Shown here piece after piece: positions 928 through 33,989 of a DNA stretch of 64,000 bases; position 1 is the first letter of the stretch; the number at the start of each line of letters is the position of its first letter. The stretch is from Magallana gigas (lineage: Eukaryota). The notes under the pieces were generated by a model that saw nothing but the letters and a program-made list of their open reading frames with translations, ran no database searches and was not told the DNA's origin. Position numbers and translations under genes: made by a program. The stretch is from NCBI RefSeq assembly GCF_963853765.1, contig NC_088854.1, positions 50,778,001 through 50,842,000 of the forward strand. The letters are read 5' to 3'.

Positions 928-1872
928 CTTCACCAGGTGTTATTAGTACTGGAAAATCAATCAAAGATTAGCTGCAGTAAAGGTTTTACACTTTTTGAAA
1001 GACAGAGAGTTGACAATTGTCAAAGGCAATCTGTGAACGTTAAGCCTTTCTTCCCAATATATAGTCTTTTCATTTATAGAAAGGCGTGGTGTGTGATGAT
1101 AAACATTGCCTAGTCTGATCATACAGACTTATCGTAGGAGTGGCAATTTGTTCACTAGGAATGGTTAAAATTCTTATCATAAGCAAGGACAGTGAAGTAG
1201 ATTTCTGCGGGGAGAGGGGACTGAAATCTATGAAAAATAATCAAATCATATATTTGCTGATATGAGGGGCTAATCGACGTAAATACAACATGTTTATGAA
1301 AAAAATAACTTGCCTGATAATGTTTTGTTGGATACATGTATCTACATGAGATAGTATGCTCTAACAATTTTGATCATCTTTGATGATAATTTTATCATCG
1401 TGATGATTTTAATTATCCATAGTTTTTAAAATTTTCTTTCACAAATTAAAAGAAGTCGGAAAACTTTTAAATTATCAGTCTCATGTAATGAATCTTCGAC
1501 CATGAATTTTATATAAACCATTCCTACACAACTATTTCGATTTCTGTGACTATATATCTTATTATGCAAAAAAATGGTCATGAGTTAAAAGTTTGAGTAG
1601 TTGGTGAAATAAATCAGCAATTTTTAGTTTAAATATGTTATTTGTAAAACGAAGCAGGTGCATCACGCCAATTTCTAATGTTTTGTGTGTGTTGTTTTCT
1701 TTTTTTCGCAAAACAGCATTTATTTATGACATTTGATTATTAAGCTTTCTGCACTATGCTTACATGTATAAGTTTCTTAAGACTGTCATATTTTGGAAAG
1801 AAAGAAGCTTAAAATGACTGATCCGATATATTTTGTCAAATAGAAGCTACAATGTATTTACTTCTTCGTTTT

Positions 1873-4318
1873 TATGGAAGGGAATTACCGCCTTAATTCT
1901 ATGTATCTTGCTTTTATTCTTATTATGCTTACTTCTTTATTCTTCATTACATTTACACTTGCATGTCACTTTATTGTTTTCATATTCATGCTTATCCAAT
2001 TTCACTTTGATTCTCTTTGATCTTTCATTGTTTGCTTAATTCTATGTTGCAACATTCTCTTCTTATTCGTGTAAATTCTTTCTTCTATCTCTGTTACAAA
2101 CGTGAATTCAAACACGCAAACCATAAAGCACTTTCAATAAAGACGAATACAAGTTGCATGAATTTAATGCTGCATTATGCCGCCAGGCGGCAGTGTGCGC
2201 GCTACAATCGCTGCTCCCCGAAAAAAACCCAACGAAGCTAGCTAAATGTGGGATGTTTCGCACCATGACATTTCGCTCCAATGTTTATATGTTCAGATCA
2301 AGAAATGGAGGGGAGGTTAATGTACTAACGAAGGGATAATTTATAATTTTGTTTGCCGGGGAGGGGGTGGGGGGGGGGGGGGGGGGGAGTAGGTCGAGTT
2401 CTATTTTCAGTAGGTTTACTATGTGAATTTAAAAAGTTTGAATTTTCAAGGGTGGTGGGGTGACTGGACCCTCCTCCTAAAATAAAATAAAATTCTAAGT
2501 CTGTGCATCAGTTATATTTATGAGACGATCTAATCTTACAGTATTCATAATTAGCACCCGTATCATAATTATCATCATCACAAGCTTGATATGGAAGTCG
2601 GTCAATTCAACTATTCATTTAATCAAGACGACATGTATGAGGTTCATGTCTCTAAGTTACATGTATCATAGCCTAAACACCTTCAAATCTAAACATGGAC
2701 ATTCAGTTACATGTACATGATTTATATTAAAATAAACAAACCTACAATAAGCATGGCTGTGAGTGATACATACACATTTTTATCACTTCAAAAATCTGTG
2801 TAAATAAGAAGCATACATTATTAATGTTCTGTATTTTGGAGAAAAAAAAATATTTTATTTAGAACTTTATATAAGAATTTTTATTAAGATTTGATTTAGA
2901 TTTAAAACCAAAACTCATAAGAAGTCATATCACATACCGTATTTTAATCTCTTTGCCTGGTTTGTTTTCGTTTACTCATTGTGTAATTAATTCACTGATA
3001 ATTTAGATTCGTTAATTTTACCGCGTTTATTTCTGCGACTCCACCATTCTGTGCCGAATCGCAAGAATATAAAATCGCGTGCACCAAACTTAGTTTTCAT
3101 ATCACAAGTTCAAAACTTTTAGAAAAATAAGTGAGATTTTAAAACCTGCAGTTTTAAGTTTTTTAACCCGGAATTTCACGCGGATATTAATTCATCGCAT
3201 TTTATCAGGGATACACAGTACTGTAGCCTAACAAGAGGTAAATAGTGATTCATGCAAGTGATAATTTTCACACGTACTGGAGTACAAGAAAAGCTACTTC
3301 TTAGTATTTAGTACCCCAGTCCTTTTATTGTTTTTCAAAAACATCTTTAAATTTGGTTTAAATTTACTTCAATTTCATCTACATGTTCCACGGGTACCTG
3401 TGGACAGAACCGTGCATCACCCCACCTTTTTTCACCTCAAATGAAAATAAAGTCCTGTCGACAAGTACTTATGACATGTTCCACTTATAAAAATTAAGAT
3501 TCCTGCAAATAATTTGCAAATAATTTGTTACTGCATATATATACGGTACAACATTGCATTGCGGATCTAGAATGAGATCAGATCGACCCCCAATGGAAAA
3601 TTTACACTTATTTAACAACCAATAAAAATGTTACATTAAAAGTTTAAAATTTATCAATTTAAACTTAACTGTTATATAAACTGTTATAGTTAAGTTTAAA
3701 CTGATAAATTTTAAACTTTTAATGTAACAAAAACATTAATACAAAATTATCTCTCAGACCCCCCTTCTGATTTTTTTAGAACCGCGCGGAGGCATTTTAC
3801 ATGTACACAAAAAAAACCTCCGTATCTTTTTAAGTCTGCGTATATCGTGGCTTGTTAAAAGTTAATTATATTAACATGTATTTCATATTCCTATACTAAG
3901 CCCTTAATTTGAGATGCTTTCACGAATTTATTAAATTTATGCCATTTGTTAGTTTCGTTTTAATAAATCTTCGGGAGCAGCAATTGTAGCGCACACACTG
4001 CCGCCTGGCGTCATAATGCAGCATTAAATTCATGCAACTTGTATTCGTCTTTATTGAAAGTGCTTTATGGTTTGCGTGTTTGAATTCACGTTTGTAACAG
4101 AGATAGAAGAAAGAATTTACAGGAATAAGAAGGGAATGTTGCAACATAGAATTAAGCAAACAATGAAGGATCAAAGAGAATCAAAGTGAAATTGGATAAG
4201 CGTGAATATAAAAACAATAAAGTGACATGCAAGTGTAAATGTAATGAAGAATAAAGAAGTAAGCATGATAAGAATAAAAGCAAGATACATAGAATTTTGA
4301 CGGTAATTCCCTTCCATA
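1873..4318. mobile_element. Non-autonomous TIR element with ~350-bp TIRs, IS3EU-like
   Basis: 1873-2220 and 3971-4318 are highly similar inverted copies starting TATGGAAGGGAATTACCG. CGTTTT is directly repeated on both outer flanks (6-bp TSD candidate). No transposase ORF lies inside. Confidence 0.65.
3630..3728. repeat. AT-rich hairpin with 41-bp arms
   Basis: gttacattaaaagtttaaaatttatcaatttaaacttaact and its reverse complement differ by one mismatch. A single diverged arm recurs near 25269-25308. Confidence 0.85.
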
Positions 4319-7014
4319 CGTTTTATTGTCGTGTTTTCCTATTCTATTAAGACACGTATATCTATTTAACATAATCACGCAAGTTTCAATTTTAAAAGAA
4401 TGCCCAGAAACCACATGTTTTTTTTTAAATTTAGAGAAATTACCCAAACTTCTGATAAAGAAAATAAAGAAAATTGAATAAATTTTGTTCCGCTACATTT
4501 TCGTAGAGAAATTTAAATTATAAAAACTTCGATCACTGAACGACATACAGTGTCAGATGAAGAACTCATATCCTGTGATCCCAAATTAACCTTCAAGTTT
4601 TCACAACCGTTTCCTTTTGTATTTCCTCTTTCAGCCGACAGATCTATCCAAAATATCGAAAATATTAATTAGCAGACTTTTGATATGAGGGGCTCAATAT
4701 TATATCCATATCATATCATATCTTTATCAAAATTCCCCTTCATCTTCCCTGGGTTTGACATTTTGATATGTCGTTGAGTTCTTGTGATCTTTGTTTATGA
4801 GTTTAATATGGAGTTCATTTAAAATACCTTCAAGTCTTCAAAAACCAGTTCAGGTCCTTACGAGTATCACTGGGTTTTCTACTTCCTGTGTATATGCGTG
4901 GTAGCATCCGGTCATCATTGGTATCTTTCATCACCATGTAAATTTTTCTTTCGGTATTAATAAAAGCTGCGGATCGTTGTCTCAATAGGAAACTTTGGGT
5001 AGACAGATGGGCCCGTCAACCAGAGTTTCCCTAAGACAAAGTTATAGATCGGCAGCAAAGAATATGACGACTTTATTGCTAACCATCCTTTGACTTTTTG
5101 GTGAGAAGAGGAAGACAAAACTTTGGGTCACCACAGACACAATGTTATGAGAATATCTTGACCTTCGGAAAGCGATACAAAACAAGCACAGCAAATCAAC
5201 GCAATTATGAAGAACGAGAGATTATATAATGTCATATGGTTATTATTGAAAAGAATGCATCTCCAGCGTGTGTTGGTTACTAGAGTTTACAGTAGGTGGT
5301 ATCGACTGACTCCTGCTATTAAACAATTGTTTGATAAATGTATCAATATGACTCAGACAATTGCGAAACACCAGTAAGGGTATTTATTGGTTTGTAACAT
5401 TAATAAAGCCTTCCTGGAACGTACAAAGTTATACCATTTGAATACACTATTTTATTAGTGGTTTGGGATAAGAGAAGTCTTCATTATAAAAACATGAGTT
5501 AAAGAATACATTTTTTAATACTAAAAAAAATAACAAAGAAAGAAATAGGCAGACATTAATCTACGATTTTTTTTGGTCAAATGTGTGTCTACTCTCTTTT
5601 AAGGTAGAATAAATTAGAAAAAATTGAATACAATATAGACTAATTACGTAATTTTTACTTCTTTTTTTTAAATCAAAGAATGTGTTGTAGTTCTTATACT
5701 ATTTTCACCATAAGGTGTTGCAGATAAAATGGAATAATCACAAAAGTCACAGAATTCGATGCATGTATAAATCTTTTTTTTGCATGCAACGTTGTACATA
5801 AAGCGTGTCTTGAAAGTTTGTTAATCTTCTATAAGACCATGAAATAAAATTGAAAATGGGTACACATACAAATATGACAGATTTCACGCTTTATAACAGT
5901 GGAATCATCAATGCTGTACAGTGTAAAAAAAAATTGACTCCTTGAAACAAAACGTTTAGAGTAAGACAATTTCTTGAAACCTCTCCGAGTTTTGTTCCAA
6001 AAAGACATATCTTTTTTGGAAATTTTTCTTGGAAAAAAATCAATAATACCTTTGAAATCTAAGAACTCTGACTTAAATTTTCCCATAATAAGTCTTGGTT
6101 ATATTAGAGGAGTGGTTACGAAGTCAGAATATATTTTTACAAAGTCTCGCTTTTTTGATTGGGTACGAATCCCTGAACAGCTAGAATTGTTTATGCTTAT
6201 TTCTTTTAATCCTATTAAAAGGTAATGTACATGCATATAGATAATTTAAGAAATTTCAGAATAAATTTATTTAAACGTTTGTCAATATGATATTTTGTAT
6301 GCGCGTTGGGTTTTTTTCAAGATTACTTACTGTGTAAGGTCCCCTTTATAAACATAAATTATAAACATTTTCCTCTAAACGAGGGGATTTCAAAACAATG
6401 TACGCATCAATGTAGAAAGTTGGATTTTCCCATCTTGTCGTTTTTAAACATACATTAATATGTATAGGTTGATAAAAGCAAAATATTCGTTAAAGACGGT
6501 ATGAATCGGCGAAGAAGCAATAGGTAGATGAAAATATATGTAAGGATAAATTTGTTCTATTTTGTCATCTAGACTAGGCGTTTATCAAGATACTATTGAA
6601 ACATGCGATGATTATGACTACAATTCTGACGGTTTCTAAGAGCCTGATTAGATTTATTAATGAAACTCCAATAAAACGCCGGACAGAAGAAATCAAAAGT
6701 GATACATGTATATGCAATTACATCAAAATACAGAATATATGGACATATACCTAACTCTATTTATGAAAACCAAATGGTGGTTGCCGTGTTCGATAGAAAA
6801 GCGCGTAAAATGTTAGTGTATTTTGCCTACTTACGGGATATTCCTGCTATATATTTACATTTTTCAGTGTCTTTGCCTGTGATAACACTACGTATCGATT
6901 TTGAACTATACAGTCCAGCAACTTCAAATGACATAATTGGGGCGCCAGCGGGGTTTGCTTATTTATATTCAAATATTTTACCGCAAAATGGCTGAAAATT
7001 ATATAAATATAAGT

Positions 7015-13001: not shown

Positions 13002-13445
13002 CACCACATTCACAATCAAATAAATTAAAAAATTCAAACACATGTACAAACTATGAATTCAAGCTTAATTAATTACATATATCAGAGAAAACATACGTTT
13101 CCTCCGAATTTCGACATTTCTAGTCACAGAATTTTGCATATATCAGAAAGCGGTAAGGCATTATACATGTACCAATTTTGTAGAATTCTGATAACAATAA
13201 CAAGTACATGCATGTATAAATTAGTTAAATATCTTTGACTGAAACATTCACATATCACACTGTCCCGTCTACAAAATTAGGTTAATCAGCACCTTGATTA
13301 AACATTCTAATTCAATCCCATTAACGTAGAAAAGTGATACCGTATATATATAAATATACAAAATGGTGTCGATATTTTGTTTGGAGGGGAATGGTGAGGG
13401 TGGAGTGGGTGGGGGTGGGGATAGTATTCTTGGGGTAGATAAAGT

Positions 13446-13607
13446 TCACATGTACTCTAAATGGGATGTGTATGAGGCGAGACTTAAGCTTCCGACATTA
13501 TATAACCGGTCCTGTTTGGTATGGTTCATCATATTCGTCAGAGTTCCACCAGGCATGCGCAGATTCATGTAATCCCACAACACCTTGTAGCAAAATCTGT
13601 ACTGGTC
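13446..13607 (-). CDS. Terminal coding exon of the RPTP (DQYRFCYKVLWDYM...EYM*), absent from the ORF track on this strand
   Basis: Acceptor ttttcag|GAC CAG TAC AGA TTT TGC TAC completes the D2 Q-loop/helix in phase 0. TGA at 13446-13448. Confidence 0.88.
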   Translation of the reverse strand, partial: DQYRFCYKVLWDYMNLRMPGGTLTNMMNHTKQDRLYNVGSLSLASYTSHLEYM

Positions 13608-16600
13608 CTGAAAAAGTTAAGAGTATTGCAATTGTTGAAACGTGTTGACTAATGATTTGCTTTTTGAATTGCATGGTAGTATGGTCACAACGAATTGTTT
13701 ACTTTACTGGTATATGAACCATTGTAAAGGTAAATAAACCCGTATTTTGAGATAGCCCCTAAAAAGAACCTCAGTGTAGATTTTCTTGTAGATTATCGAC
13801 ATTTTTAACAAGAATAAATAGGGGTTACCCCATATCCAATATATTCGAATTTTAAGGAGGTTGACTTTAGTTTTGATTGCGCACGTCTTTGCACATTCCA
13901 GTAAAATACAGTGTATCTATACTTTTTATGAAATTGTTTCGATGACATTTATTAGATTAAACACAATAAACAATATACAGATAAAAATATTGAAAATATT
14001 TAAAGGAAAAATTTTATTTTTAAACGATTTTCCGTTGTTTGGTATGTGAGCGTTTATGACGTTATGATAAAATGAAGCTTATAAGAAATAACATGAAAGA
14101 AAGGGTACAAATTAATATTATTAACCACGTATTACAATTTGAGGAAAATCGCTTTTGTGGCTTTTTTAAAAACTGCTTCGAAGTGCGGTGAATATCTTCC
14201 TATGGTAAATAAACCTGTATTTTGAGATGGCCCCTAAAAAAGAACCTCAAGGTAGATTTTCTTGAAACTTCGCAAATATACTGGACTTGGTGTAAATTAC
14301 TTGGTGTGCCATGGTAAAAAATAAAGAGTTTCGCGTAAGTAGTTTTTTCCGCAAAAAGAAAGACCCAATTCGGCCTCCTTAAACTACTTGAATGTTCACT
14401 CTGTACAGGTTTAATTTACAAAACTTGTGGAACTTTATTTTATCGCGACTTTACATTTGCATCCGTAATTATAACAAAGAGCCGTTTACGTGAGTGGGAT
14501 CAGAAATTGTAGCATGTGTTGCATAACTATTCCGTCATTAAAAAAAGAAAAAGAAAAACATACAAGTCTCATACACTAAGATGATTAATATTCTCTCAGA
14601 AGAGATTGTGTGGTAATTAACGAAGAATTATCAAGAAAGAAATATTATGATAATTGTTGTAATAATAGAAAAATATATTTATTAATAAAAAAAATGTCAA
14701 TCGAAGAATGGCTTATATTTTCGTGAAAAAGACTGTCAGAGGAGGCAGCTAGCGTGATAATACATGAATGAATACTTATTAATATTCCTGCATAAAAGGA
14801 AATTTTTTTACATTAATTTATGTTCATTTTTACTTTCCACGTAAACACCGAAATTCTAAACATTTAGTTGAAATGTTGTCTCTGCTGGTCATGAATGGAA
14901 CTATATTTTTCAGAGCAATTGTGTGAAGAGTACCTGGCTTTAGTAGATAGTAAGCACTGATCGAATATATTAATTGTAAAAATGAATAGATTCTAAATAC
15001 AGACAAAGGACTTTGGGAAGTTGTGTCATACAGCAATGTGACGTAGGCCAGTGTATTTCATATCTATATTGTTGGTCATTTGGTGGTGGCTCTTTGGAAT
15101 CCACCAGAATTGCTCTAATCTAAAGCTATGTCTACATTATGATAACCTGTGCATACATCATTTGAGATTAGCGTCATTTAAAGCTTTTTTATGCAAGAGG
15201 TATATAATTACACGAGAGTCAATGCGGCTCTAGTCTAACTTACCAGCGTGTCCACTATCTGCGGCCTGCGCTTCTTCATGTGCTTGACGTTATGATAAAC
15301 GTCTACGTCGTGGTCCATTTGCATGGCTTCACATATCGTCCACACCGCGCAGAATAGTCCACTGTGTGTAGCGCCATCTTTACAGTGCACCACAATGGGC
15401 GCCGTGTTCTCATTGGATTGTCTCTGCCAACTCCGGACCAAGTCAATGAGGTCCAGGAACATTGTCTTGGACTTTGGAACAAAGTCATTCTCGCTCCATG
15501 CATTGAACTGAAACTGGCGGACCTCCCTCGGGGTCGACTTCACCCTCAGCATGTTGTGGAGCTTGAAGTGTCGTATCGTCACGTTCTCTTGCTGCCAAAT
15601 GTTTGTGTTGTCCACGAAGAACGGTTCAAACTTCTTGATTTTGTCTTCCGGCCAGTACTCGGCTGTGGTGTCGTCCTCGCTTTGGAAGTCCTCCATCATA
15701 ACGATCGTCTGCACCTTGTGGTCGTACACAAGTTTCCAGAAATCTATCACAGTCGTGTGAAGGGGAGACTGTGTCACTATGAAATGGCTGTTCAGCTCAT
15801 GGCTATCCAGGAAGACGGCATTGATGTAATCTGTACGTTCGAAGCCACCGGGAGTTTTCAAAATCGGTCTGTAGTCGTTCGGGGGAACAACATCCGGAAA
15901 ACGATTCTTGGAATAGTTCATTGGAAGATGCGAAACTGAACACTGTTTTTTAGTTGGTTTCCTAGTGAACAATTGCAAAGATTTAAATTGGTCTCTGAGA
16001 AAAGAGTGTTTCGTTTTTGGATTGCGCATAGTCAAAGTGTGATATTTTTCCTTCAGGTCAGAACCTGCCCGCGTATCTCCTGCAACGCGAGCTTCGAAAA
16101 TCGCTTCGTATATAAATATATACTGTTTTACTGTCCGAACCATTGCTATTCTGTCCTTTCGCATTCTTCTTACAAAGGAATATACACTAATGATACCCTC
16201 TGCTTCGTACTGATCTATCAAGGCGTCGATTGCAATAAAGGTCCCCGTTCGGCTCACCCCCGTACCACAGTGTACCACTAGCGGGGACTTATCGTTGCCA
16301 TGGTACTCGCGCACTTTATGGCGGAACTCTAACAGAGGAATGGGGTCATCCGGTACACCATGGTCTGGCCAGGAGCAAAAATCGAAAATATGGACGACTT
16401 TTGTGTGAGCATCATGCTTTGTTTTGATCTTTACTGATCTTATAACAAAGTCCGCGTACTCTTTCTCGTCAATCAACGCGAGAGTAAAGCTACCATACTG
16501 AACTTTTCCCATCTCCGAGTCTGGCCAATATTTTGAGCATTTCACGATTTTATCCTCAACCACATTTGTGATCATGACAACCACTTTGATATTATACTGA

Positions 16601-19600
16601 AACAACATTCTCCAAAAATCTAACACCGTTTCTTCGTCGAAAGGGCTCTGAGCGGCTATGTACCCATGAGGCTTATTGTACCCCTTGACGAAGTTAGCGT
16701 TAATAAAATCTCCATTGGAGTTTTCATCGGGATCAAGAACTACTCTGGTGTGGTCGTACGGTAATAAGTGTCGAAAACGGTTCTTTCGGGTGTTTTTATT
16801 CCGGACCGCGTCATTCCAAGGCGCCAAAGGCTGGTGAGGAAGCTCGTGAAACTCTTGCTGGAATGTGACGGGTGCAGACGACATGTTGACTGGAATACTT
16901 CCGTTCAGAATGGTTCCGTGATATCCGTCATCCGGAACAAGATCGCGTCCAGAAATGATGTACCGACTCTCTCTCAGCGAGTAGATAGTGTTCCAGTGTT
17001 CGTGGGGATTGTATTCGTCGATAGCGGTCAGCTGAACTTTTTTCTCCTCCTCAAATGTGTCGTACAGAGGCGGAGAGAACCGGTTGATTCTGGATCGGAG
17101 GAATAGAATCAGGAGAATGATTGCGACCAGTAGAAGAATCAAAAGTATTATCACCACGGCAACAATGACCGGTGTGTTGTCTGAGGCGGTGGCGACAGGA
17201 ACCACCACCGGCGGCACAACGGTGGTCACTATCAAAACCGTGGTGGCTGTGGCGGACATTTTGGAATAATTGGTCTTGGTTTTTGTCCCCACAGTGCTAA
17301 CTATCTCATAATAAATGTCGTATTTTGTGTTCTTCTTCAGGGGAGGGTTTGACTTTCCGCCATATACGTTGCCGTCGCCGACAACAAAAATTCGACTAGT
17401 TTTGATGTCGGAGTCGGCGAACTTCGCCACGACGACCCCGGGAGGACCAGCGGCCTGCTGACGTCTACGTCGACTTGACGCAGGGAGCTCATGGACGTAG
17501 ATCTGGTAGGCCGTCAGCGGCCCCGTGTCGATTTTGAAAGGATAGATCTCAATAGTGATGGTCGACTCTGTTGTATTCTTCAACTGTGGAGCCGGCGGTG
17601 TTTCCGGGTCGCCCTGGTAGGTTCTGGCAAACGCTATGGCTGGGTCCCCAGTGCCCTCGTTGGAGCTGGCGGACACTTCCACTTTGTACTGGGTGTACAC
17701 TAGGAGCGCGCACTGATCGTGCGATGTGCCCTCGCTCTCGGGTTTCACAATTGTCTTGAAATCTATGACCAAAGTTCCATCCGTAGCTGAACTTGTGATC
17801 TGAAATATTAAAATTCAAGCTGGTCTAGGCACCCTCCGGCTATACAAGTTCAACATAACAATTGTCATGTATAGAATTGATTTCTTTTCTAAAAACATAA
17901 TATTAATTTTCTATCATGAGCTTTACAATTGATCAGATTTCTTTCTTTCAATACAGTATTAATAATACAATACTTCTAGTATCAAAAGATCTTTTAGTAA
18001 ACAGTGTTATAAACAAGTGTATTAGGACATATGGTGACGTTCAGATACCCTGTAACTATTGATGACTCCCCCTAGGAAGACGGGTGGGGCCCATGAGATC
18101 CTCAGACAGGTTTCATTGTGTGGAATCACGGTGACGTTGGAGGGTGGACCGGGAATCGCCTGTCTTGTCTGGGTCTGATTCACATCACTGAAGTTTCCCC
18201 ACAGCCCGGGCTTGGTCCTGGCTCGAACCTATCAATAAAATCAATTTTACCAGATATCCCCAAAAAGGAAGGAGATAGAAATGCTTTTAAAATATGCACT
18301 ATTCTAAATTCAACATCGCAGGAAAGACAACCCACCTTGATGTAGTAATTTGTGTACGGCGTCAGTGAGCTCACTGTTACAGAGTTATCTGCACTTGACT
18401 TGTGGGTGAAGTCTTTGAAGTCAGGGGTGATACTAAACGACACCTCGTATTCCCGGATAATCCCATTACTTGGAATTGGCACCGTGTATCCCACCTCAAT
18501 GCTTGTCACGCCCGGACTGATAGTGTTGATTACTGGTGCAGCCGGTTCTATTTATGGAAGTCAAAATTAAGAAAATAAATCTCGAAAATAAAACTTAAAA
18601 CAGCTCAATTTCCATTTCTATGCGTACAGTGGAGTAGTGAAAGAACTGCGAACGCTAACGCCCGCTTCCCGCCTACATTTATATCCAAATATTTCGGAAT
18701 TTCTGTCAGATATTCAAAAACTAAGTTTTCTTTTGAAAACTAAGTTGTCTACTAAAAAATATAATCAAATCCTAGTCAATTAATATCAAAATTAAATTTG
18801 TAATCAAATTATTTAAAAAAAAATTTAAACAAAAGTTTTGCTAACGCATGGTGTTAAAAAATTTCATTGAAATCGGTCTCTATGAGTGAGGAAAATATTA
18901 TTTAGCGGCCGATATGTGCATAAAAACTTAATCATCACATGTTTACGATGGATATTAAAGTAAATTTTCATTTTCATATGTGCATAAAAACTTAATCATC
19001 ACATGTTTACGATGGATATTAAAGTAAATTTTCATTTTAATTCATATTTGTTAATTATATTTTGAAACGTTACAAAGCAAAAATTTTGCTTTTTTTGGGA
19101 ATGTATTTTGGTCTGTACATTTTTTTTGTAGATATATGTCCCCCCCCCGTGACACAATAAACTCTTTGGTATAAATATGTTTTAAAAAATATGTAATTTC
19201 TATAAAACCCCTTAAAAGGAATTTTTGTTTCACGGGGGGGGGGGGGGGGGGGGGGGGGGCATGTTTTATAAAAAAAAATTCGTTTTCCGTTAGTTTCTAT
19301 TATGAAATGAGCTATTTTAACCCAAAATACATAGTTATCTCTCTTTTTTCTTTTTTTTTAAATAATTTATATTTAATGAAAACATACATTATTGTTTACA
19401 TTATTATGAAAAAAAATTTAATTAGATAATTATCAAAAAATGACCTTTAGTTAGGCGGCTAGATAATGCTATCGTTCGCAGTCCTTGGATCAAATGTAAG
19501 CTCGTCGAATTTTTGTGTCTCGGGTTCTGTTTTGTTTACCATTTTAATTTAATATGATATTAATTACGTCATTTTCCATACCTGCTTCGTCTGTGCGCAC

Positions 19601-22600
19601 CGTGAGGTATGTCTGGGGCCCGTCTCCGACGCTGTTTCTGTAGGACACACCAAACGTGTAACTACTGTACGGGGTTAACCCGCTAATCGTCACCCGGCCC
19701 CGTTTAACGGTCCCGTTAATGTCGTTAAGCCCGGTCCCACTTAGGGTGTAAGGGTACTCCAACAGATTACCTCCCCTGTCCTCACAAAGCGGGGGTTCCC
19801 ACTCCAGTGTCAGGCTTGTAGCGTTAAACCCAATGACACCCACGTTTCGAACAATTCCTCTTGGTCCTGAAGATAATTATTATATACATTGAAATGAAAA
19901 GTGTACTTATTTTGTGTCTAATTCTTACAACATTTTTGTACATACATGTAGCTTTAAAGGGGACCTGCAAGCCAACTGAAACTTTACTTTTGCCTATAGG
20001 CCCTATAATATGTACCTATGGCAAAAAGCCGCATCAAAATCGATGCAGTAATAAGGACGTAACGCCGTTTGAAAGTAAATTACACCTATTTAAATATAGG
20101 TAAATTGTACAAATTCAATGTCCTAAGACTTTTGACATTTGTAAAATACTTGTAAGACTTATACACTGACTTTCATCCTGAGTGGTGATATTCTGAGATA
20201 TGGTGCGATCGTTCTCTGTGGAGGTCAGGTTAAACACTTCGATAACGGCCTTGACATTGTACCGTCTGTAGGGCTTCAATCCCTGCACACTGAGCGACCC
20301 AGACCTCTCGACAACCCTGATGTGTGAAAGAAAAAACATATCTATCAGGCTTAAGGCATAGAGAGGAAAAACACAATGACATATTGGCAAAGCACAAAGT
20401 CGTGAATCGTGTCCGATAGTGTCAATGGCTTTTTTTCCCTCACCTCGTGCCCTCGACGGTCAGATTGAGGTCCCCGCAGTCTCCGATCCCGATAATTCCG
20501 TACGTTATGGTCACGTTCCCAAGGTTGTCGAAGTTTTTACCTGCCCACGTCACAGAAAGTACGTTGTTCACGGCGTCATAGCTCACCGAGAAACTTTGGA
20601 ATAGTGATCCTGAAACAGTCCATCAATAAACACAGTGTATATTTCTGTATAAGTTACTCCTATTTTAAATTGAGGAACAAAATGTACTGTTATACTTTCA
20701 TGTTAAATACTGAAATCTGATTGGTTAAAACGCAGTTCATAATCCGTTCTATTACCCTCAGCTTTAGCAACACACTTAGCAATGGGTAACATTAAAAATT
20801 GTTACATGCGCGAAAATTATGCGCGTACGGTTCGCTGTAGAATCACGTTATTCCTATATAAAAGCAGTAAAATTTTCTTACAAGTTAAGACATTCAGTAT
20901 AACACAATAAATAGTGCCTGTTTGGGAGGATAACAGTTGAAATCGACACTCCTCGAAAACCATTGTCAACCTCCGCTTCGCGTCGGTTGACAATGGTTTT
21001 CTCGGGCTGTCAATTTCAACTGTTACCCTCCCAAACAGGCACTATTTATATAGTGTCTTACCTGGAGGAGGGGTGGGGGCTGGTGTGGGGGGTCGCAGCG
21101 TGGTCGTGGTGGGCACTGAAAATGATATAAACTGTGTTAATTTGTGTGAGTATTTGATAGATAAATAAATATCCGCATTCATACAATGATTGCTTGTTCG
21201 ACAAGTCTTTGAATAGAATCCATTAATTTCAGTCAATGTCTGACGTGATACTGTTTCGATCTAACTTACCGATACACTGGGTGGGGTAGAATGGGCTACG
21301 GAACCCAGGGGTCCAGTCGGTCATTAGCTTCCCGCTCTCGTCGGCCCTGACGACGCTCACCCGGAAGCTGTAGAGAGCATCCACATCGAGGCCAGTAAAC
21401 GTTTCGATGACTCTGTCCGTGTTCACTACACTGTAACGTTTGACGACATTCCAGGACGCTGAGGGGTTTTGCTCAAGTACTTCCAACCTGAAAAAGGGGC
21501 ACATGGTTTATATAACCAAATCACAGATTGCTGACAAAGTACTCGTAAACTACTCGTAATCAATAAAGACAGTTTGTGTAGGAATTTTACACATTAACTG
21601 GAATATCAAAGTGCCAGCAAAAATGTTTCTTGGCATAGATTTTTATGTGTGTGGTTTGTTTTTTTTAACTATGGAGAGAATAATATTAATATACTTAGAG
21701 AAATAAATTCCCGTTTATAAAGGCAGTTTTAAATTGATACAGAAAGTGGACATCTTTTCACATTGAAAAACGATTTTGGGGGATAGGTATTTCCCTTTCT
21801 TTTACTAAAAACAAATGGGTTTGTGAATTGAAAAATCATCGTATTCAACAATAGCTTTGTGCATGCTGTAAATCATTTCTCATCTTACTAAGCTTAATCA
21901 GGAAATCAGTTATATCCCCTAAAGCATCAAATTATAACATGGAAACCAATCCAAGAATAATAATCGTCTGGGTGAGCTCTGATTATCAAATGGCAAGAGG
22001 ATTTATTGCTGTTGTAAGCAGAGTGCCAGTACAGAGTGTAACCTTAAATATTGTGTGTGTTAATTGAAGTTAACCAAATAATATTTGATATCAATTTCAC
22101 AACTATGGGTAGAGGAAAATTACATACAAATTCTGGACCGTAACTTGAGTCGTTTACGGCTTTGGCTATCGGGCCAAATTCACAAAAGTCATCCTATATA
22201 GCTATGTAAGTAAAATCTTTGCATATTAAGGACGGTTTGTCCTGTGTGTACAGGTACCTGTATTCTCCTATGGGACCGTCTCCTATGTCAAGGTCCTTGA
22301 CCCATTTTTGGAAGGTCACGGTCATATTGCCACACACGTTGTCACTGACTTGCGGCGGGTCTTTCAGTTTTGGCAGCACTGTAAGATCGAATTGAACACC
22401 AATTGATTACTGGTAAATTATGAAACTGTCTAATCTTTCCTTCTGAATAATTTAGAGAGAGTCATGAAATATGATTTGAGTAGAGTTATGGACGTACGTC
22501 TTTGACATCCTGGCCCTCCATACTCTTCGTGGCAGTTTCCTGAGGAGCACAGACCGTTGATGTTACTACATGTGTCATTATCTGGACAGTGGCATTCAAA

Positions 22601-25532
22601 AGCACAGTTCTTTCCGAAAAAGTTGGGTTCACAAGCTGTTAAAAATTAAAAAAAGGATTTTAATACACAATGGTACAACATCTATATGAATTTTTTTTCA
22701 TACACCTTGGTATATTAAATTGTTTCCTTCGTTTACAAAATAAACATGCATAATTTCACTAGGCCGAGAACTCACGCGTTTGACAATAAGGTACCCCGGA
22801 CCAGCCCCATTCACAGGTGAAGGACGTGCAGAACCCGTCTGTCTTTCTGCAGTCATCCGCTCCGTTCAAACAGTGACAAGTTCCGGTGCAGTTTACTCCG
22901 AACTTCCCATCTTCACAGCCTGTTTTAATGATAAAAGTGAAGGGAAAATTAAAGTAGTCCAATTAAGTCACTCTTTTAGTGTTACGTTTTATTTAAGACA
23001 GAGGGAAACTTACCTCTACAGATGCCACCCACAGGGTAGAACCCTGCAGAGCACGTGTTGCAATTCTCGGGACCTGCTGATGTGCAACCATCACACGCAA
23101 TGTTGCAACCTTTAGAAATTAAACATAAGACTCTTATTATGCCAATAAAATAAGGGGTAAATTTGATTGCCTTTTTCAAGAACCTTTCCTTAGATTTTAC
23201 TTTAAAGCAGTGATCGCAAAAAAACATGATTCCTTGGTACGAATAAACTTTAACAATATGTAAATATGTAGTTGCGTACCCCGGCATGTTGTGCCAACTC
23301 TGTAGAACTGGTCAGCACAGTTCACGCATGCGTCAGGCCCGGGACCTGTGCACCCGTTACACGCTACATTACAGGCTGAAATGTAGAAAACACACTCAAA
23401 GCCCATCCTAATGAATTGGTATTCATACAATAGCAAAACTCAAGAAATATATAACACAGTGAGAGTCTTTAATAAAGAAAACGTTCAGTATTGAAATAAT
23501 TGATTTAAAGATTATTGACAACATTGATAAAACATTCTTTTTATAGAAATGACATTCTCCTGTAAATGTACATAACAGACAGCTACGTATGTATACACTG
23601 TTTGGATGATATGATGTAATTTTTTTATTCCGAAAGTGTTATGTTGTTTTAGTTAGTCATGACCCAAAGAATTCGGGGCCGCAAAACGTAGACAGTGTCC
23701 TTTTGAATCTAATATCACCCAGTTAAAAAGGAGCTGATATCGTTTTAAGGTCGCGAGCATGTCTAGGGGATAAGTATACGCTGATGTACACTTAAAATTT
23801 GACGACTTTATTTTTATGAAATGGTATGCGTAACTTTTAAAATAAACCCATTTTTATGGTGGAAATTGCATTCACCGGGGTTTAAGTAAATCTGGCGAGC
23901 ACACGGTGCCGCGTTCTTTGGAGTATTATATCCCGACAAGTCTGGCTTTATTACCTCATGGTGCGTGTTTGGTTGGGATTTATCTAGGCTATAAAGAGAG
24001 AGTAAACATACACACCCAGACAGACTGGTCCCCCGCCCTCCGTACTGTTTCCGCAGTACTCCGTGGGCTGACATCGAGGGAAACAGGTCTGGGAAACTGA
24101 AAGGTGAAAGATTTCAGTGAATATAAATACATAAAACTGGTTACTGAGCCCGAGTTATAAAATGTAACAATTCGTGTTCATAGAGATATAAACAACATTT
24201 TTTGAATTTCTGTGCTATGGTTTAAATGAAAAGATAACACGTAACCAAACAACATATATAATATATATGTCGTCAATACTCAAATCCAATAAAATTCTGA
24301 TAACCTAATATCAATATTCCAAAAGAATACCAATTATCTGTATCAGTCAGTGGAAAGATTAGGCGGTATACAATCCAACACTCAGCAGCAATTCTTAAAT
24401 ACAAAGAAATTCAATTTCTAGCAATATATAATATTAAAGCTGCACCGTGTAAAGATCAGGCAAATATCATCACCACCCCCTCCCCCCAACCTACACCACT
24501 TTTTTCGACATCAGAGATAATTTCAACATACATGTATATAAAATTAAATAATGAAGGAAATAGCCCCCCCCCCCCCTTTTTTTTAAAGAGTATATAAAAA
24601 TTCTTGCTTGTCAAGTTTAGTGCCCACCCTCAACTCCCACCTTCGAAAACAATGTTGCATGTTGTTTATATATCTGCACGTGTAAAATACAAGGCATGTT
24701 GATAAACTACATGTATCAATCTAATTAAAATTAAATCCTTCACCTCACAGCCACGTATCAAATACGGGAGCGTGAAGGATTGATAAAATATGTATATGTA
24801 ATTCAGACGTCTTACAGTTTGAATAACTATATAAAATAATTGCATGTTGAATTAATTCTTATAAAAAAAAAAAACACGTTATCAGGGGATAATTTTCAGT
24901 GTTTATTTATAGCAATTGTTTTCTCAAGTGACTCCTCTTATAATATGAAATAAATATTTGGTACGACTGAAATAAATTTAATTTTCACGTAGAAAAAATA
25001 CACGCTGGTTTTTCTTTTTCTTGCATTCACATTTGAATGGTGGAAATGTTACTTTTCATTGTATAAGGAAATTCCATTATTTGAAAATGTAATAAACATA
25101 CGTAAAAAATATTTTATATTAATGATATACAAAAAATGCAGTATTAATTCACAGGTATATAGAGTAAGTATGTGAGTTAATGACTACATATATAAGTAAA
25201 ACTTTTATTATGATATATCTGTGTAATAATATACTCTCATATTATATATATACATGTATATTCATTTAGTTAAGTTTAGATTGATAAATTTTTAACCTTT
25301 AATGTAACATAATTAATTGAAAAAAAAGTAAATAAATATTCCTAAAATATCATCGCGATATGCTACGAACGTGTATAAACCAAAGCCATTCACTCGAATG
25401 CCAATATGCTCATATCAAAGTCTGTTAAAATTATTATTTTTTTTTAAATATGTAAATGTATCTACCTGTATACAATGGGAAAGAGATCAGTATTATTGCT
25501 GAAGTGAGGAAAAAGGTAGTAGGAATTGACAT
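13446..25532 (-). CDS. Receptor-type protein tyrosine phosphatase: signal peptide - EGF-like - 2 furin-like Cys repeats - 2 EGF - about 5 FN3 - TM - PTP D1 - PTP D2 (1573 aa, 16 coding exons)
   Basis: Exons: 25466-25532 (MSIPTTFFLTSAIILISFPLYT), 24016-24096, 23280-23375, 23014-23109, 22776-22919, 22498-22635, 22258-22378, 21270-21487, 21062-21115, 20444-20609, 20171-20316, 19582-19866, 18336-18547, 18049-18228, 15244-17799, 13446-13607. All junctions are GT/AG with compatible phases; total 4722 nt. Motifs: KNRF, DFINA, WPDHGVP, HCGTGVSRTG. Confidence 0.9.
15244..17799 (-). CDS. Giant exon 15 of the RPTP (FN3, TM, D1, most of D2)
   Basis: Open 852-codon exon bounded by acceptor tttcag|ATC (17799) and donor CTG|GTAAGT (15244). 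It corresponds to ORF-track entry 15235-17772. Confidence 0.92.
18912..19038 (+). repeat. Perfect 63-bp tandem duplication (period 64) in an RPTP intron
   Basis: atatgtgcataaaaacttaatc..taaattttcatttt occurs at 18912 and 18976. Confidence 0.9.
20690..21049 (-). mobile_element. ~360-bp element with a 143-bp terminal palindrome; second copy at 52833-53193
   Basis: The palindrome 20907-21049 (ataaatagtgcctg..cgcttcgcg..caggcactatttat) plus the body aligns in opposite orientation with 52833-53193. Confidence 0.85.
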
Positions 25533-27120: not shown

Positions 27121-33473
<6,353 letters not shown>

Positions 33474-33989
33474 TGATGACGGTTTTATTTGCATTGATAT
33501 TTTTAGGAATAGTTTTGTGATTTGTACATTGAACTTTCTACATTCTATATCCTCTGATTTAGTGGTATTTACCTTTAATTACTGCAGGACAGGTGTTCAT
33601 TTTCTGGCTAGATTGCTAGCGTATTCTAAGTTTACATCTACGTCCATGCCCAATATACACCGAGTCTTGCTTAGAATCATAATCAAACTTCAGACAAAGC
33701 AGAGTTAAGCTTAATACAAATTTTATAAATTATTGTCGTCCTGTTTTAAGAATCTAAACACAAGGCTAAGTTATATAAATGCAAAACATTTGTTCACCAA
33801 ATACGAAATAAAAATCACAATTATGTCTATTTTAGCCTCGCTCAGTTGATAACTCTGATTTGATTTGAACTTATCTTAACGGTACTAATGTACAACTGGA
33901 ATAAAACACACGTTTTTTTTAACTTAGATCGTCTTCCTAATCTTTTACGGTAAACCACTAAGGGTTATTTAGTAGGAGTAATCTTTCTT

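What the first reader, a model, noticed from the sequence alone, without database searches (positions are those of the whole stretch)
13446..17799. Whole TM + D1 + D2 region is intron-free, but the last intron is retained
Seen: 14 ectodomain exons of 54-285 nt, then one 2556-nt exon, then a 1.6-kb intron inside the D2 Q-loop (IVDTL|DQYRF) and a 162-nt final exon. Established: tandem-domain RPTP genes normally split D1/D2 over many small exons. As I recall, vertebrate LAR-type genes have an intron at this same QT(E)|DQY position. Inference: a block of ancestral introns was erased in place by recombination with a reverse-transcribed cDNA whose tract stopped short of the last intron. This is not a plain retrocopy, and it departs from the expected 3'-anchored loss.
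Basis: partly seen in the sequence, partly recalled or inferred. Interest (0 to 1): 0.75.

Follow-up and report, generated by a model that had tools for sequence, protein, structure and literature searches.

The report
Ancient giant exon in oyster phosphatase gene
The 2.6-kb exon that holds the membrane anchor and both phosphatase domains of this oyster receptor gene is real and expressed, but it is an old feature shared by molluscs, a brachiopod, a ribbon worm and probably annelids, so it is a well-dated textbook case of block intron loss rather than a recent oddity.

Summary
Observation confirmed. On the minus strand a 2556-nt exon (15244-17799) encodes the last FN3 domain, the TM segment, D1 and most of D2. 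A 1636-nt phase-0 GT..AG intron (13608-15243) and a 162-nt last exon follow. RNA contigs from three studies and raw polyA reads join the exons exactly there and show no splice inside the big exon.

Interpretation partly supported. An intron-rich paralogue in Patella and a hemichordate R2B-type gene each have 20 introns in this interval, 17 at identical column and phase. All 20 are missing here. The flanking introns, including the last one, sit at ancestral positions, so this is in-place block loss.

The structure is not local. The same exon and the same last intron occur in Pinctada, Argopecten, Lottia and Lingula. Uninterrupted ORFs of the same extent occur in a group that includes Capitella. 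Lineus has a shorter giant exon and keeps three 3' introns. The loss therefore predates the mollusc-brachiopod-nemertean split and took at least two steps.

Retention of the 3'-terminal intron after internal block loss is already described in the literature.

Verdict: a new, well-dated member of a known kind. The cDNA mechanism is inferred, not shown. The scan had noted this same stretch before (s1-375693, s1-375799).

The parts
13446..13607 (-). Last coding exon (162 nt with the stop codon): DQYRFCYKVLWDYMNLRM...SHLEYM*. It holds the end of the D2 Q-loop and the C-terminal tail. The 3' UTR continues below 13446.
   Evidence: RNA contigs run on to 13300 and beyond.
13608..15243 (-). Retained last intron: 1636 nt, phase 0, GT..AG. 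About 70% of it is dispersed repeats.
   Evidence: Junction by exact mapping. Spliced out in 4 RNA runs. Repeat copies elsewhere in the genome at 71-79% identity. Same site and phase in 7 other genes and in the LAR-type paralogue.
15244..17799 (-). Giant exon, 2556 nt (852 codons): last FN3 and Fn3_PTPRU domain, TM segment, juxtamembrane region, D1, and D2 up to ...IVDTL.
   Evidence: Single RNA contig piece without internal joints. 20 ancestral intron positions fall inside it.
17800..18048 (-). Intron at the 5' edge of the giant exon: 249 nt, phase 0, at an ancestral R2B position (...SYR|ITSS).
   Evidence: Joint seen in 3 RNA runs.
18049..18228 (-). FN3 exon of 180 nt. It corresponds to two exons (66+111 nt) of the intron-rich relatives, so one further ancestral intron (phase 1) is lost here.
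   Evidence: alignment column 101.
18229..18335 (-). Intron of 107 nt, phase 0, at an ancestral R2B position (YYIK|VRAR).
18336..23373 (-). Upstream ectodomain exons (Cys-rich repeats, then FN3 repeats) traced by homology. The 5' end of the gene was not defined.

Best explanation
The gene is a receptor tyrosine phosphatase of a family known only from lophotrochozoans. The family branches inside the R2B (PTPRM/K/T/U-like) group. Its ectodomain has Cys-rich repeats and FN3 domains but no MAM or Ig domain.

In the stem of this family, before molluscs, brachiopods and nemerteans (and probably annelids) parted, a contiguous block of 18 ancestral introns was deleted precisely and in place. The block ran from the last FN3 domain through TM and D1 into mid-D2. 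The next two introns downstream were lost later, in the mollusc line and in the brachiopod/annelid line. That left one 2.5-kb exon bounded by ancestral phase-0 introns.

The most likely mechanism is homologous recombination (gene conversion) between the gene and a reverse-transcribed spliced mRNA, with a conversion tract that lay inside the gene. This step is inferred. The last intron is an old metazoan RPTP intron that was never removed. In the oyster it has been inflated to 1.6 kb by repeat insertions and is spliced normally.
For: Shown:
- Exon structure and splicing.
- Giant exon plus last intron at the same L|[DTE]QY site, phase 0, in Pinctada (2565+159 nt), Argopecten (2493+159), Lottia (2517+156) and Lingula (2508+285).
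- Lineus has a 2166-nt exon and then three introns at or within 3 codons of R2B positions.
- Unnamed ORFs of 805-942 aa on genomic contigs end their alignment exactly at the last residue of the giant exon. Two of them were checked as gene calls and each is one uninterrupted ORF. Capitella teleta nests among them.
- Patella paralogue P0163 and hemichordate P0182 each have 20 introns in the interval: 17 at identical column and phase, 2 more within two columns.
- The giant-exon genes form one clade (SH-aLRT 99-100) nested among intron-rich R2B-like genes.
- If 3 of 24 ancestral introns were kept at random, a run of 20 or more losses would arise in 16 of 2024 arrangements, 0.8%.

Inferred: the cDNA mechanism, from the precise, contiguous, in-place pattern. 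That pattern is the stated prediction of the RT model (PMC3652778).
Against: No trace of the event can survive after more than 500 My (no poly-A remnant, no polymorphism), so the mechanism is untestable here.

The classic poly-A-primed model predicts loss from the 3' end, and the 3' introns were spared.

A long stem branch could also have hosted many separate precise deletions.

The two-step history rests on one nemertean gene model. The AU test for the placement that would allow a single second step is only marginal (p 0.036, group named after seeing the tree).

Annelid loci could not be read as DNA, so their last intron and last exon are unverified.
Confidence: 0.7

Rival explanations
1. Piecemeal loss: the 18-20 introns were removed one at a time by independent precise genomic deletions or break repair along the long stem branch, without a cDNA template.
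For: Two further introns next to the block were lost later and separately, perhaps twice. A lone intron one exon upstream (alignment column 101) is also gone. Single precise losses therefore do occur in this gene. Microhomology-mediated single-intron loss is documented (PMC3698931, abstract seen).
Against: All 18 are absent in every sampled lineage, with no intermediate. The three flanking introns and the ectodomain introns then stayed put in all lineages for over 500 My, which implies a burst rather than a steady rate. The clustering has a chance of about 0.8% under random retention.
Confidence: 0.15
2. Chimeric origin: the family arose when a retroposed, incompletely spliced transcript or a partial retrocopy of an R2B-type gene supplied the cytoplasmic part, which was then joined to intron-bearing ectodomain exons.
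For: The family is a paralogue that appeared by duplication in the lophotrochozoan stem. Its distal ectodomain (Cys-rich repeats, no MAM or Ig) differs from R2B.
Against: Introns on both sides of the block sit at R2B positions and phases: two upstream inside the FN3 region and up to three downstream. A retrocopy would have to carry those unspliced while all 18 in between were spliced. The block's 5' edge lies inside the conserved FN3/Fn3_PTPRU module and not at a domain junction.
Confidence: 0.1
3. Recent, lineage-specific event in this oyster or in bivalves.
For: None beyond the structure itself.
Against: The same structure is found in a limpet and a brachiopod, and a related one in a nemertean.
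Confidence: 0.02
4. The giant exon is the ancestral state, and the other RPTP genes gained their introns.
For: None found.
Against: 17 introns are identical in position and phase between a mollusc and a hemichordate gene, so they predate the protostome-deuterostome split. The giant-exon clade is nested inside the intron-rich genes.
Confidence: 0.02

Closest known systems
mRNA-mediated (reverse-transcriptase model) loss of adjacent introns that produces extraordinarily large internal exons (Niu, Hou & Li 2005, as cited in PMC3652778 and PMC2395259; Roy & Gilbert pattern of adjacent loss)
   Same: Precise, contiguous loss of many introns. The large exon lies inside the gene. Flanking introns are kept.
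   Different: The scale (18-20 introns in one block) and the dating are unusual. The event is shared by at least three phyla, with a surviving intermediate form in a nemertean. The mechanism is not demonstrated here.
Internal intron loss with retention of the 3'-terminal intron, as described in Cryptococcus (Sharpton et al. 2008, PMC2395259)
   Same: Adjacent introns are lost in the middle of the gene, and the last intron is rarely lost. The explanations offered there are internal cross-over points, self-primed reverse transcription, or later recombination with a wild-type allele.
   Different: That work concerns recent losses among close fungal relatives and has population data. This is a single ancient metazoan case.
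R2B receptor tyrosine phosphatases (PTPRM, PTPRK, PTPRT, PTPRU)
   Same: The cytoplasmic region is about 40% identical. A membrane-proximal Fn3_PTPRU domain is present. The gene is placed in the R2B clade and shares intron positions at the edges of the block.
   Different: There is no MAM and no Ig domain; the distal ectodomain has Cys-rich repeats. 20-21 R2B introns are missing. D1 has Q-loop MVRT and D2 has His in place of the C(X)5R arginine.
LAR-type (R2A) RPTP gene of the same genome (G000:C7, about 13.948-13.952 Mb)
   Same: Tandem D1/D2, and a phase-0 intron at the same D2 Q-loop site, MVQTE|DQYQF.
   Different: D1 and D2 are split over about 11-12 small exons. It falls outside the R2B-like clade (fly LAR used as outgroup).

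Membership tests
R2B RPTP (PTPRM/K/T/U) | N-terminal MAM domain followed by an Ig domain | tested here: not met
   No PF00629 or Ig family in the full-length orthologues P0110 and P0144 or in the precomputed lists for the clade. The vertebrate R2B hits carry PF00629.
R2B RPTP (PTPRM/K/T/U) | FN3 repeats with the membrane-proximal Fn3_PTPRU module, a TM segment, and tandem D1 and D2 | tested here: met
   PF23144 plus two PF00102 stretches.
R2B RPTP (PTPRM/K/T/U) | Phosphatase region groups with R2B rather than with LAR, PTPRC or PTPRG | tested here: met
   Trees. The clade containing R2B and the giant-exon genes is separated from the outgroups with SH-aLRT 100.
mRNA-mediated block intron loss | Introns removed precisely, with the reading frame and flanking residues intact | tested here: met
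   Gap-free alignment across most of the 20 positions.
mRNA-mediated block intron loss | Adjacent introns lost together while neighbours stay at ancestral sites (in place) | tested here: met
   18-20 contiguous losses, with retained introns at alignment columns 77, 137 and 1064. Chance of such a run is 0.8%.
mRNA-mediated block intron loss | Bias of loss towards the 3' end (poly-A-primed version of the model) | tested here: not met
   The last intron is kept in all species and the last three in Lineus. The literature reports this bias as inconsistent (PMC3652778, PMC2395259).
mRNA-mediated block intron loss | Germline expression of the gene and reverse-transcriptase activity at the time of the event | not testable with these tools
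   The event is older than the split of the phyla.
Processed retrogene | All introns of the parent absent, new locus, poly-A or target-site remnants | tested here: not met
   At least 12 introns are kept, three of them mapped to ancestral positions. Remnants cannot be tested at this age.

The most novel reading that the evidence does not exclude
The family preserves a two-stage record of giant-exon growth. First, a stem-lophotrochozoan conversion removed 18 introns. Then the same two introns adjoining its 3' edge were lost independently in molluscs and in the brachiopod/annelid line, while the terminal intron was never lost in any lineage. This would point to a directional process (introns next to a giant exon are preferentially lost) together with a selective need for one terminal intron.
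Probability: 0.25. Interest if true: 0.45.

Novelty: new member of a known kind. Interest (0 to 1): 0.3.

Why it matters
The case is clean and datable. About 20 introns that are conserved from molluscs to hemichordates are absent as one block from a gene family found across at least three phyla. An intermediate form survives in a nemertean, and the terminal intron has been kept everywhere.

It gives a structural marker, the giant exon, for recognising this lophotrochozoan RPTP family. Public annotation names the family inconsistently: kappa-, T-, epsilon-, F-, S-, delta- and alpha-like.

It is also a useful example for models of internal block intron loss. It does not reveal a new mechanism and says nothing specific about this oyster genome.

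Tried and rejected
- Look-ups of Lineus isoform X2 (P0148), Osmerus PTPRM (P0161) and Sycon PTPRD-like (P0041) found no gene on record. Lineus was recovered through its longest isoform, P0203.
- Two annelid-like ENA loci (P0149, P0151) came back without DNA. Only their gene-call coordinates were available. These show one uninterrupted ORF each; the last intron and last exon there are unverified.
- The AU test of Lineus as sister to all other giant-exon genes gave p 0.036. This is too weak, and post hoc, to settle whether the second step happened once or twice.
- Literature searches for this gene family's exon structure found nothing specific.
- The idea that the last intron holds something functional was looked at only by a repeat search. 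It is mostly dispersed repeats, and its length ranges from 131 to 1636 nt among species, so no conserved element is suggested.
Full report
**The observation**

The minus strand of the window carries an 845-aa open frame at 15235-17772. Pfam finds a membrane-proximal Fn3_PTPRU domain and two tyrosine-phosphatase domains in it.

A transcript-derived protein from public assemblies, P0001, is 1348 aa and 100% identical over this exon. It maps collinearly on the window:
- The large exon runs from 17799 to 15244 (2556 nt). It is preceded by AG and followed by GTAAGT after ...RRPQIVDTL.
- A 1636-nt phase-0 intron occupies 13608-15243.
- The last exon, 13607-13446, encodes DQYRFCYKVLWDYMNLRM...SHLEYM and the stop.

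I did not define the 5' end of the gene.

**RNA evidence**

RNA runs hold 0.56-0.69 of the sampled words of 13300-18300. That is close to the exonic share of the stretch.

When the runs were laid on the stretch:
- Contigs from three RNA studies and three raw polyA reads carry the joint that skips exactly 1636 nt, reading GT..AG on the minus strand.
- Three runs carry the joint 17799->18049.
- In each contig run a single 2558-nt piece covers 15243-17800.
- No joint inside the giant exon is listed in any run.
- The direction of the raw reads fits transcription from the minus strand.
- Low-depth pieces across the intron borders look like a few percent of unspliced precursor.

The limit is short-read and contig evidence.

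**Own genome**

The window lies in a 564-Mb assembly. RNA runs that hold the stretch carry an oyster label, and the nearest named orthologue is from Pinctada. I therefore take the source to be an oyster; this is an inference.

The giant exon is single copy. Every other phosphatase-domain match in the genome is an exon-sized piece.

The LAR-type gene of the same genome (G000:C7, about 13.948-13.952 Mb) has D1 and D2 split over roughly a dozen small exons. It has a phase-0 intron at MVQTE|DQYQF, the site homologous to IVDTL|DQYRF here.

**Orthologues**

I mapped annotated proteins exactly onto their own loci.

| Species | Giant exon (nt) | Last intron (nt, phase 0) | Last exon (nt) |
|---|---|---|---|
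| Pinctada imbricata | 2565 | 830 | 159 |
| Argopecten irradians | 2493 | 340 | 159 |
| Lottia gigantea | 2517 | 345 | 156 |
| Lingula anatina (brachiopod) | 2508 | 131 | 285 |

In all four the intron lies between the residue aligned with L and [D/E/T]QY.

**A probable fourth phylum**

A group of unnamed ORFs of 805-942 aa sits on genomic contigs of up to 2.9 Mb. Their alignment to the query ends at the very residue where the giant exon ends.

Two of them were looked up and are single uninterrupted gene calls of 2814 and 2715 nt. Their DNA could not be fetched.

Capitella teleta protein P0212 nests inside this group (SH-aLRT 100 with P0145), so the group is most likely annelid.

**The intermediate form**

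The Lineus longissimus (nemertean) gene, P0203, has the same 5' boundary intron and a 2166-nt giant exon. It then has three introns:
- one phase-0 intron, 3 codons from an R2B phase-0 position in a variable loop;
- one at the VHC(I/M)|(D/N)G site, 2 nt from the R2B position;
- the shared last intron before DQYRF.

The original block loss therefore covered 18 introns. The next two were lost later.

In the trees Lineus groups with Lingula and the annelid-like genes (SH-aLRT 95-96), not at the base of the clade. Forcing Lineus to the base costs 7.4 log-likelihood units (p-AU 0.036). This is a weak, post-hoc hint that the two extra introns were lost at least twice.

**What the ancestral structure was**

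Two intron-rich relatives were mapped:
- P0163 from Patella caerulea: 33 exons, with Kringle and FN3 domains.
- P0182 from the hemichordate Glandiceps talaboti: 36 exons.

On a common alignment each has 20 introns between the 5' boundary intron of the giant exon and the last intron:
- 17 are at the same column and phase;
- 2 more are within two columns with the same phase;
- one pair has the same phase in a poorly aligned juxtamembrane stretch.

None of the 20 exists in the window gene.

The window gene's two introns just upstream (YYIK|V and SYR|I, both phase 0) and its last intron coincide with introns of both relatives. One further R2B intron, at alignment column 101, is also missing from the exon at 18049-18228.

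The giant-exon genes form one clade (SH-aLRT 99-100). It is nested among lophotrochozoan R2B-like genes, which in turn group with tunicate and vertebrate PTPRM/K and the hemichordate gene.

The intron-rich state is therefore ancestral, and the giant exon is derived by loss in place.

**Mechanism**

The following is shown: the removal was precise, contiguous and in place, and it happened on one stem branch. Hundreds of millions of years followed in which the flanking introns stayed in every sampled lineage.

If 3 of the 24 ancestral positions in the aligned region were retained at random, a run of 20 or more losses would arise in 0.8% of arrangements.

This is the pattern the reverse-transcriptase model predicts for recombination with spliced cDNA (PMC3652778), and I take that as the most likely cause. 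No direct trace can remain at this age, so this step is inference.

The sparing of the 3' end does not argue against the model. Sharpton et al. report that internal losses predominate and that the 3'-terminal intron is rarely lost. [quoted passage not shown] They list three explanations: internal cross-overs, self-primed reverse transcription, and later recombination with a wild-type allele (PMC2395259).

Rivals:
- Serial single deletions remain possible, because single losses clearly did occur in this gene.
- A chimeric retrocopy origin is unlikely, given ancestral introns on both sides of the block.
- A recent event, and an ancestral giant exon, are both excluded.

**Classification**

By its phosphatase domains (about 40% identity), its Fn3_PTPRU module, its tree position and its edge introns, the gene is R2B-like.

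It lacks the MAM and Ig domains that define R2B. It has Cys-rich repeats distally instead.

I therefore call it a lophotrochozoan R2B-derived paralogue family, not a member of R2B proper.

**Verdict**

The event is ancient, shared across phyla and stepwise, and its 3' pattern has precedent.

It is a good, datable example of a known phenomenon, and interest is moderate to low.

The scan had noted this same stretch before (s1-375693, and s1-375799 on the active sites).

Noticed in passing
window 13608-15243: About 70% of the last intron consists of two dispersed repeat families, with dozens of copies at 71-79% identity across the genome. One piece near 15029 reaches a depth of 982-5273 in RNA contigs, presumably from copies expressed elsewhere.
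   Followed up: partly
window 15244-16800 (D1 and D2): D1 keeps the Cys and Arg of C(X)5R (HCGTGVSRTG) and the WPD loop, but its Q-loop reads MVRT instead of MVQT in molluscs (MIRT in Lingula). D2 reads HCKDGATHSG (Arg to His) and has no WPD. Lineus and the intron-rich R2B-like genes keep the D2 Arg. This bears on the sister note about a pseudophosphatase: D1 is not obviously dead.
   Followed up: partly
window about 28100-33500, + strand: ORFs with SRCR-like repeats, a ZP-like stretch and a Thr/Pro-rich mucin-like ORF suggest a neighbouring secreted or membrane glycoprotein gene.
   Followed up: no
L008 (G000:C7:13945500-13952500, minus strand): The LAR-type RPTP gene of the same genome has a phase-0 intron at the D2 Q-loop (MVQTE|DQYQF) but none at the equivalent D1 site. 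The R2B-type genes have one at both.
   Followed up: partly
P0001 against window 15244-22307: The transcript-derived protein differs from the window at a few residues (for example I/V in D1, and several in the FN3 exons). RNA runs show many single-base differences. This fits the high allelic diversity usual in oysters.
   Followed up: no
source names of orthologues: Orthologues of this one family are named kappa-, T-, epsilon-, F-, S-, delta- and alpha-like in public annotation. The names are not a guide to subtype.
   Followed up: no
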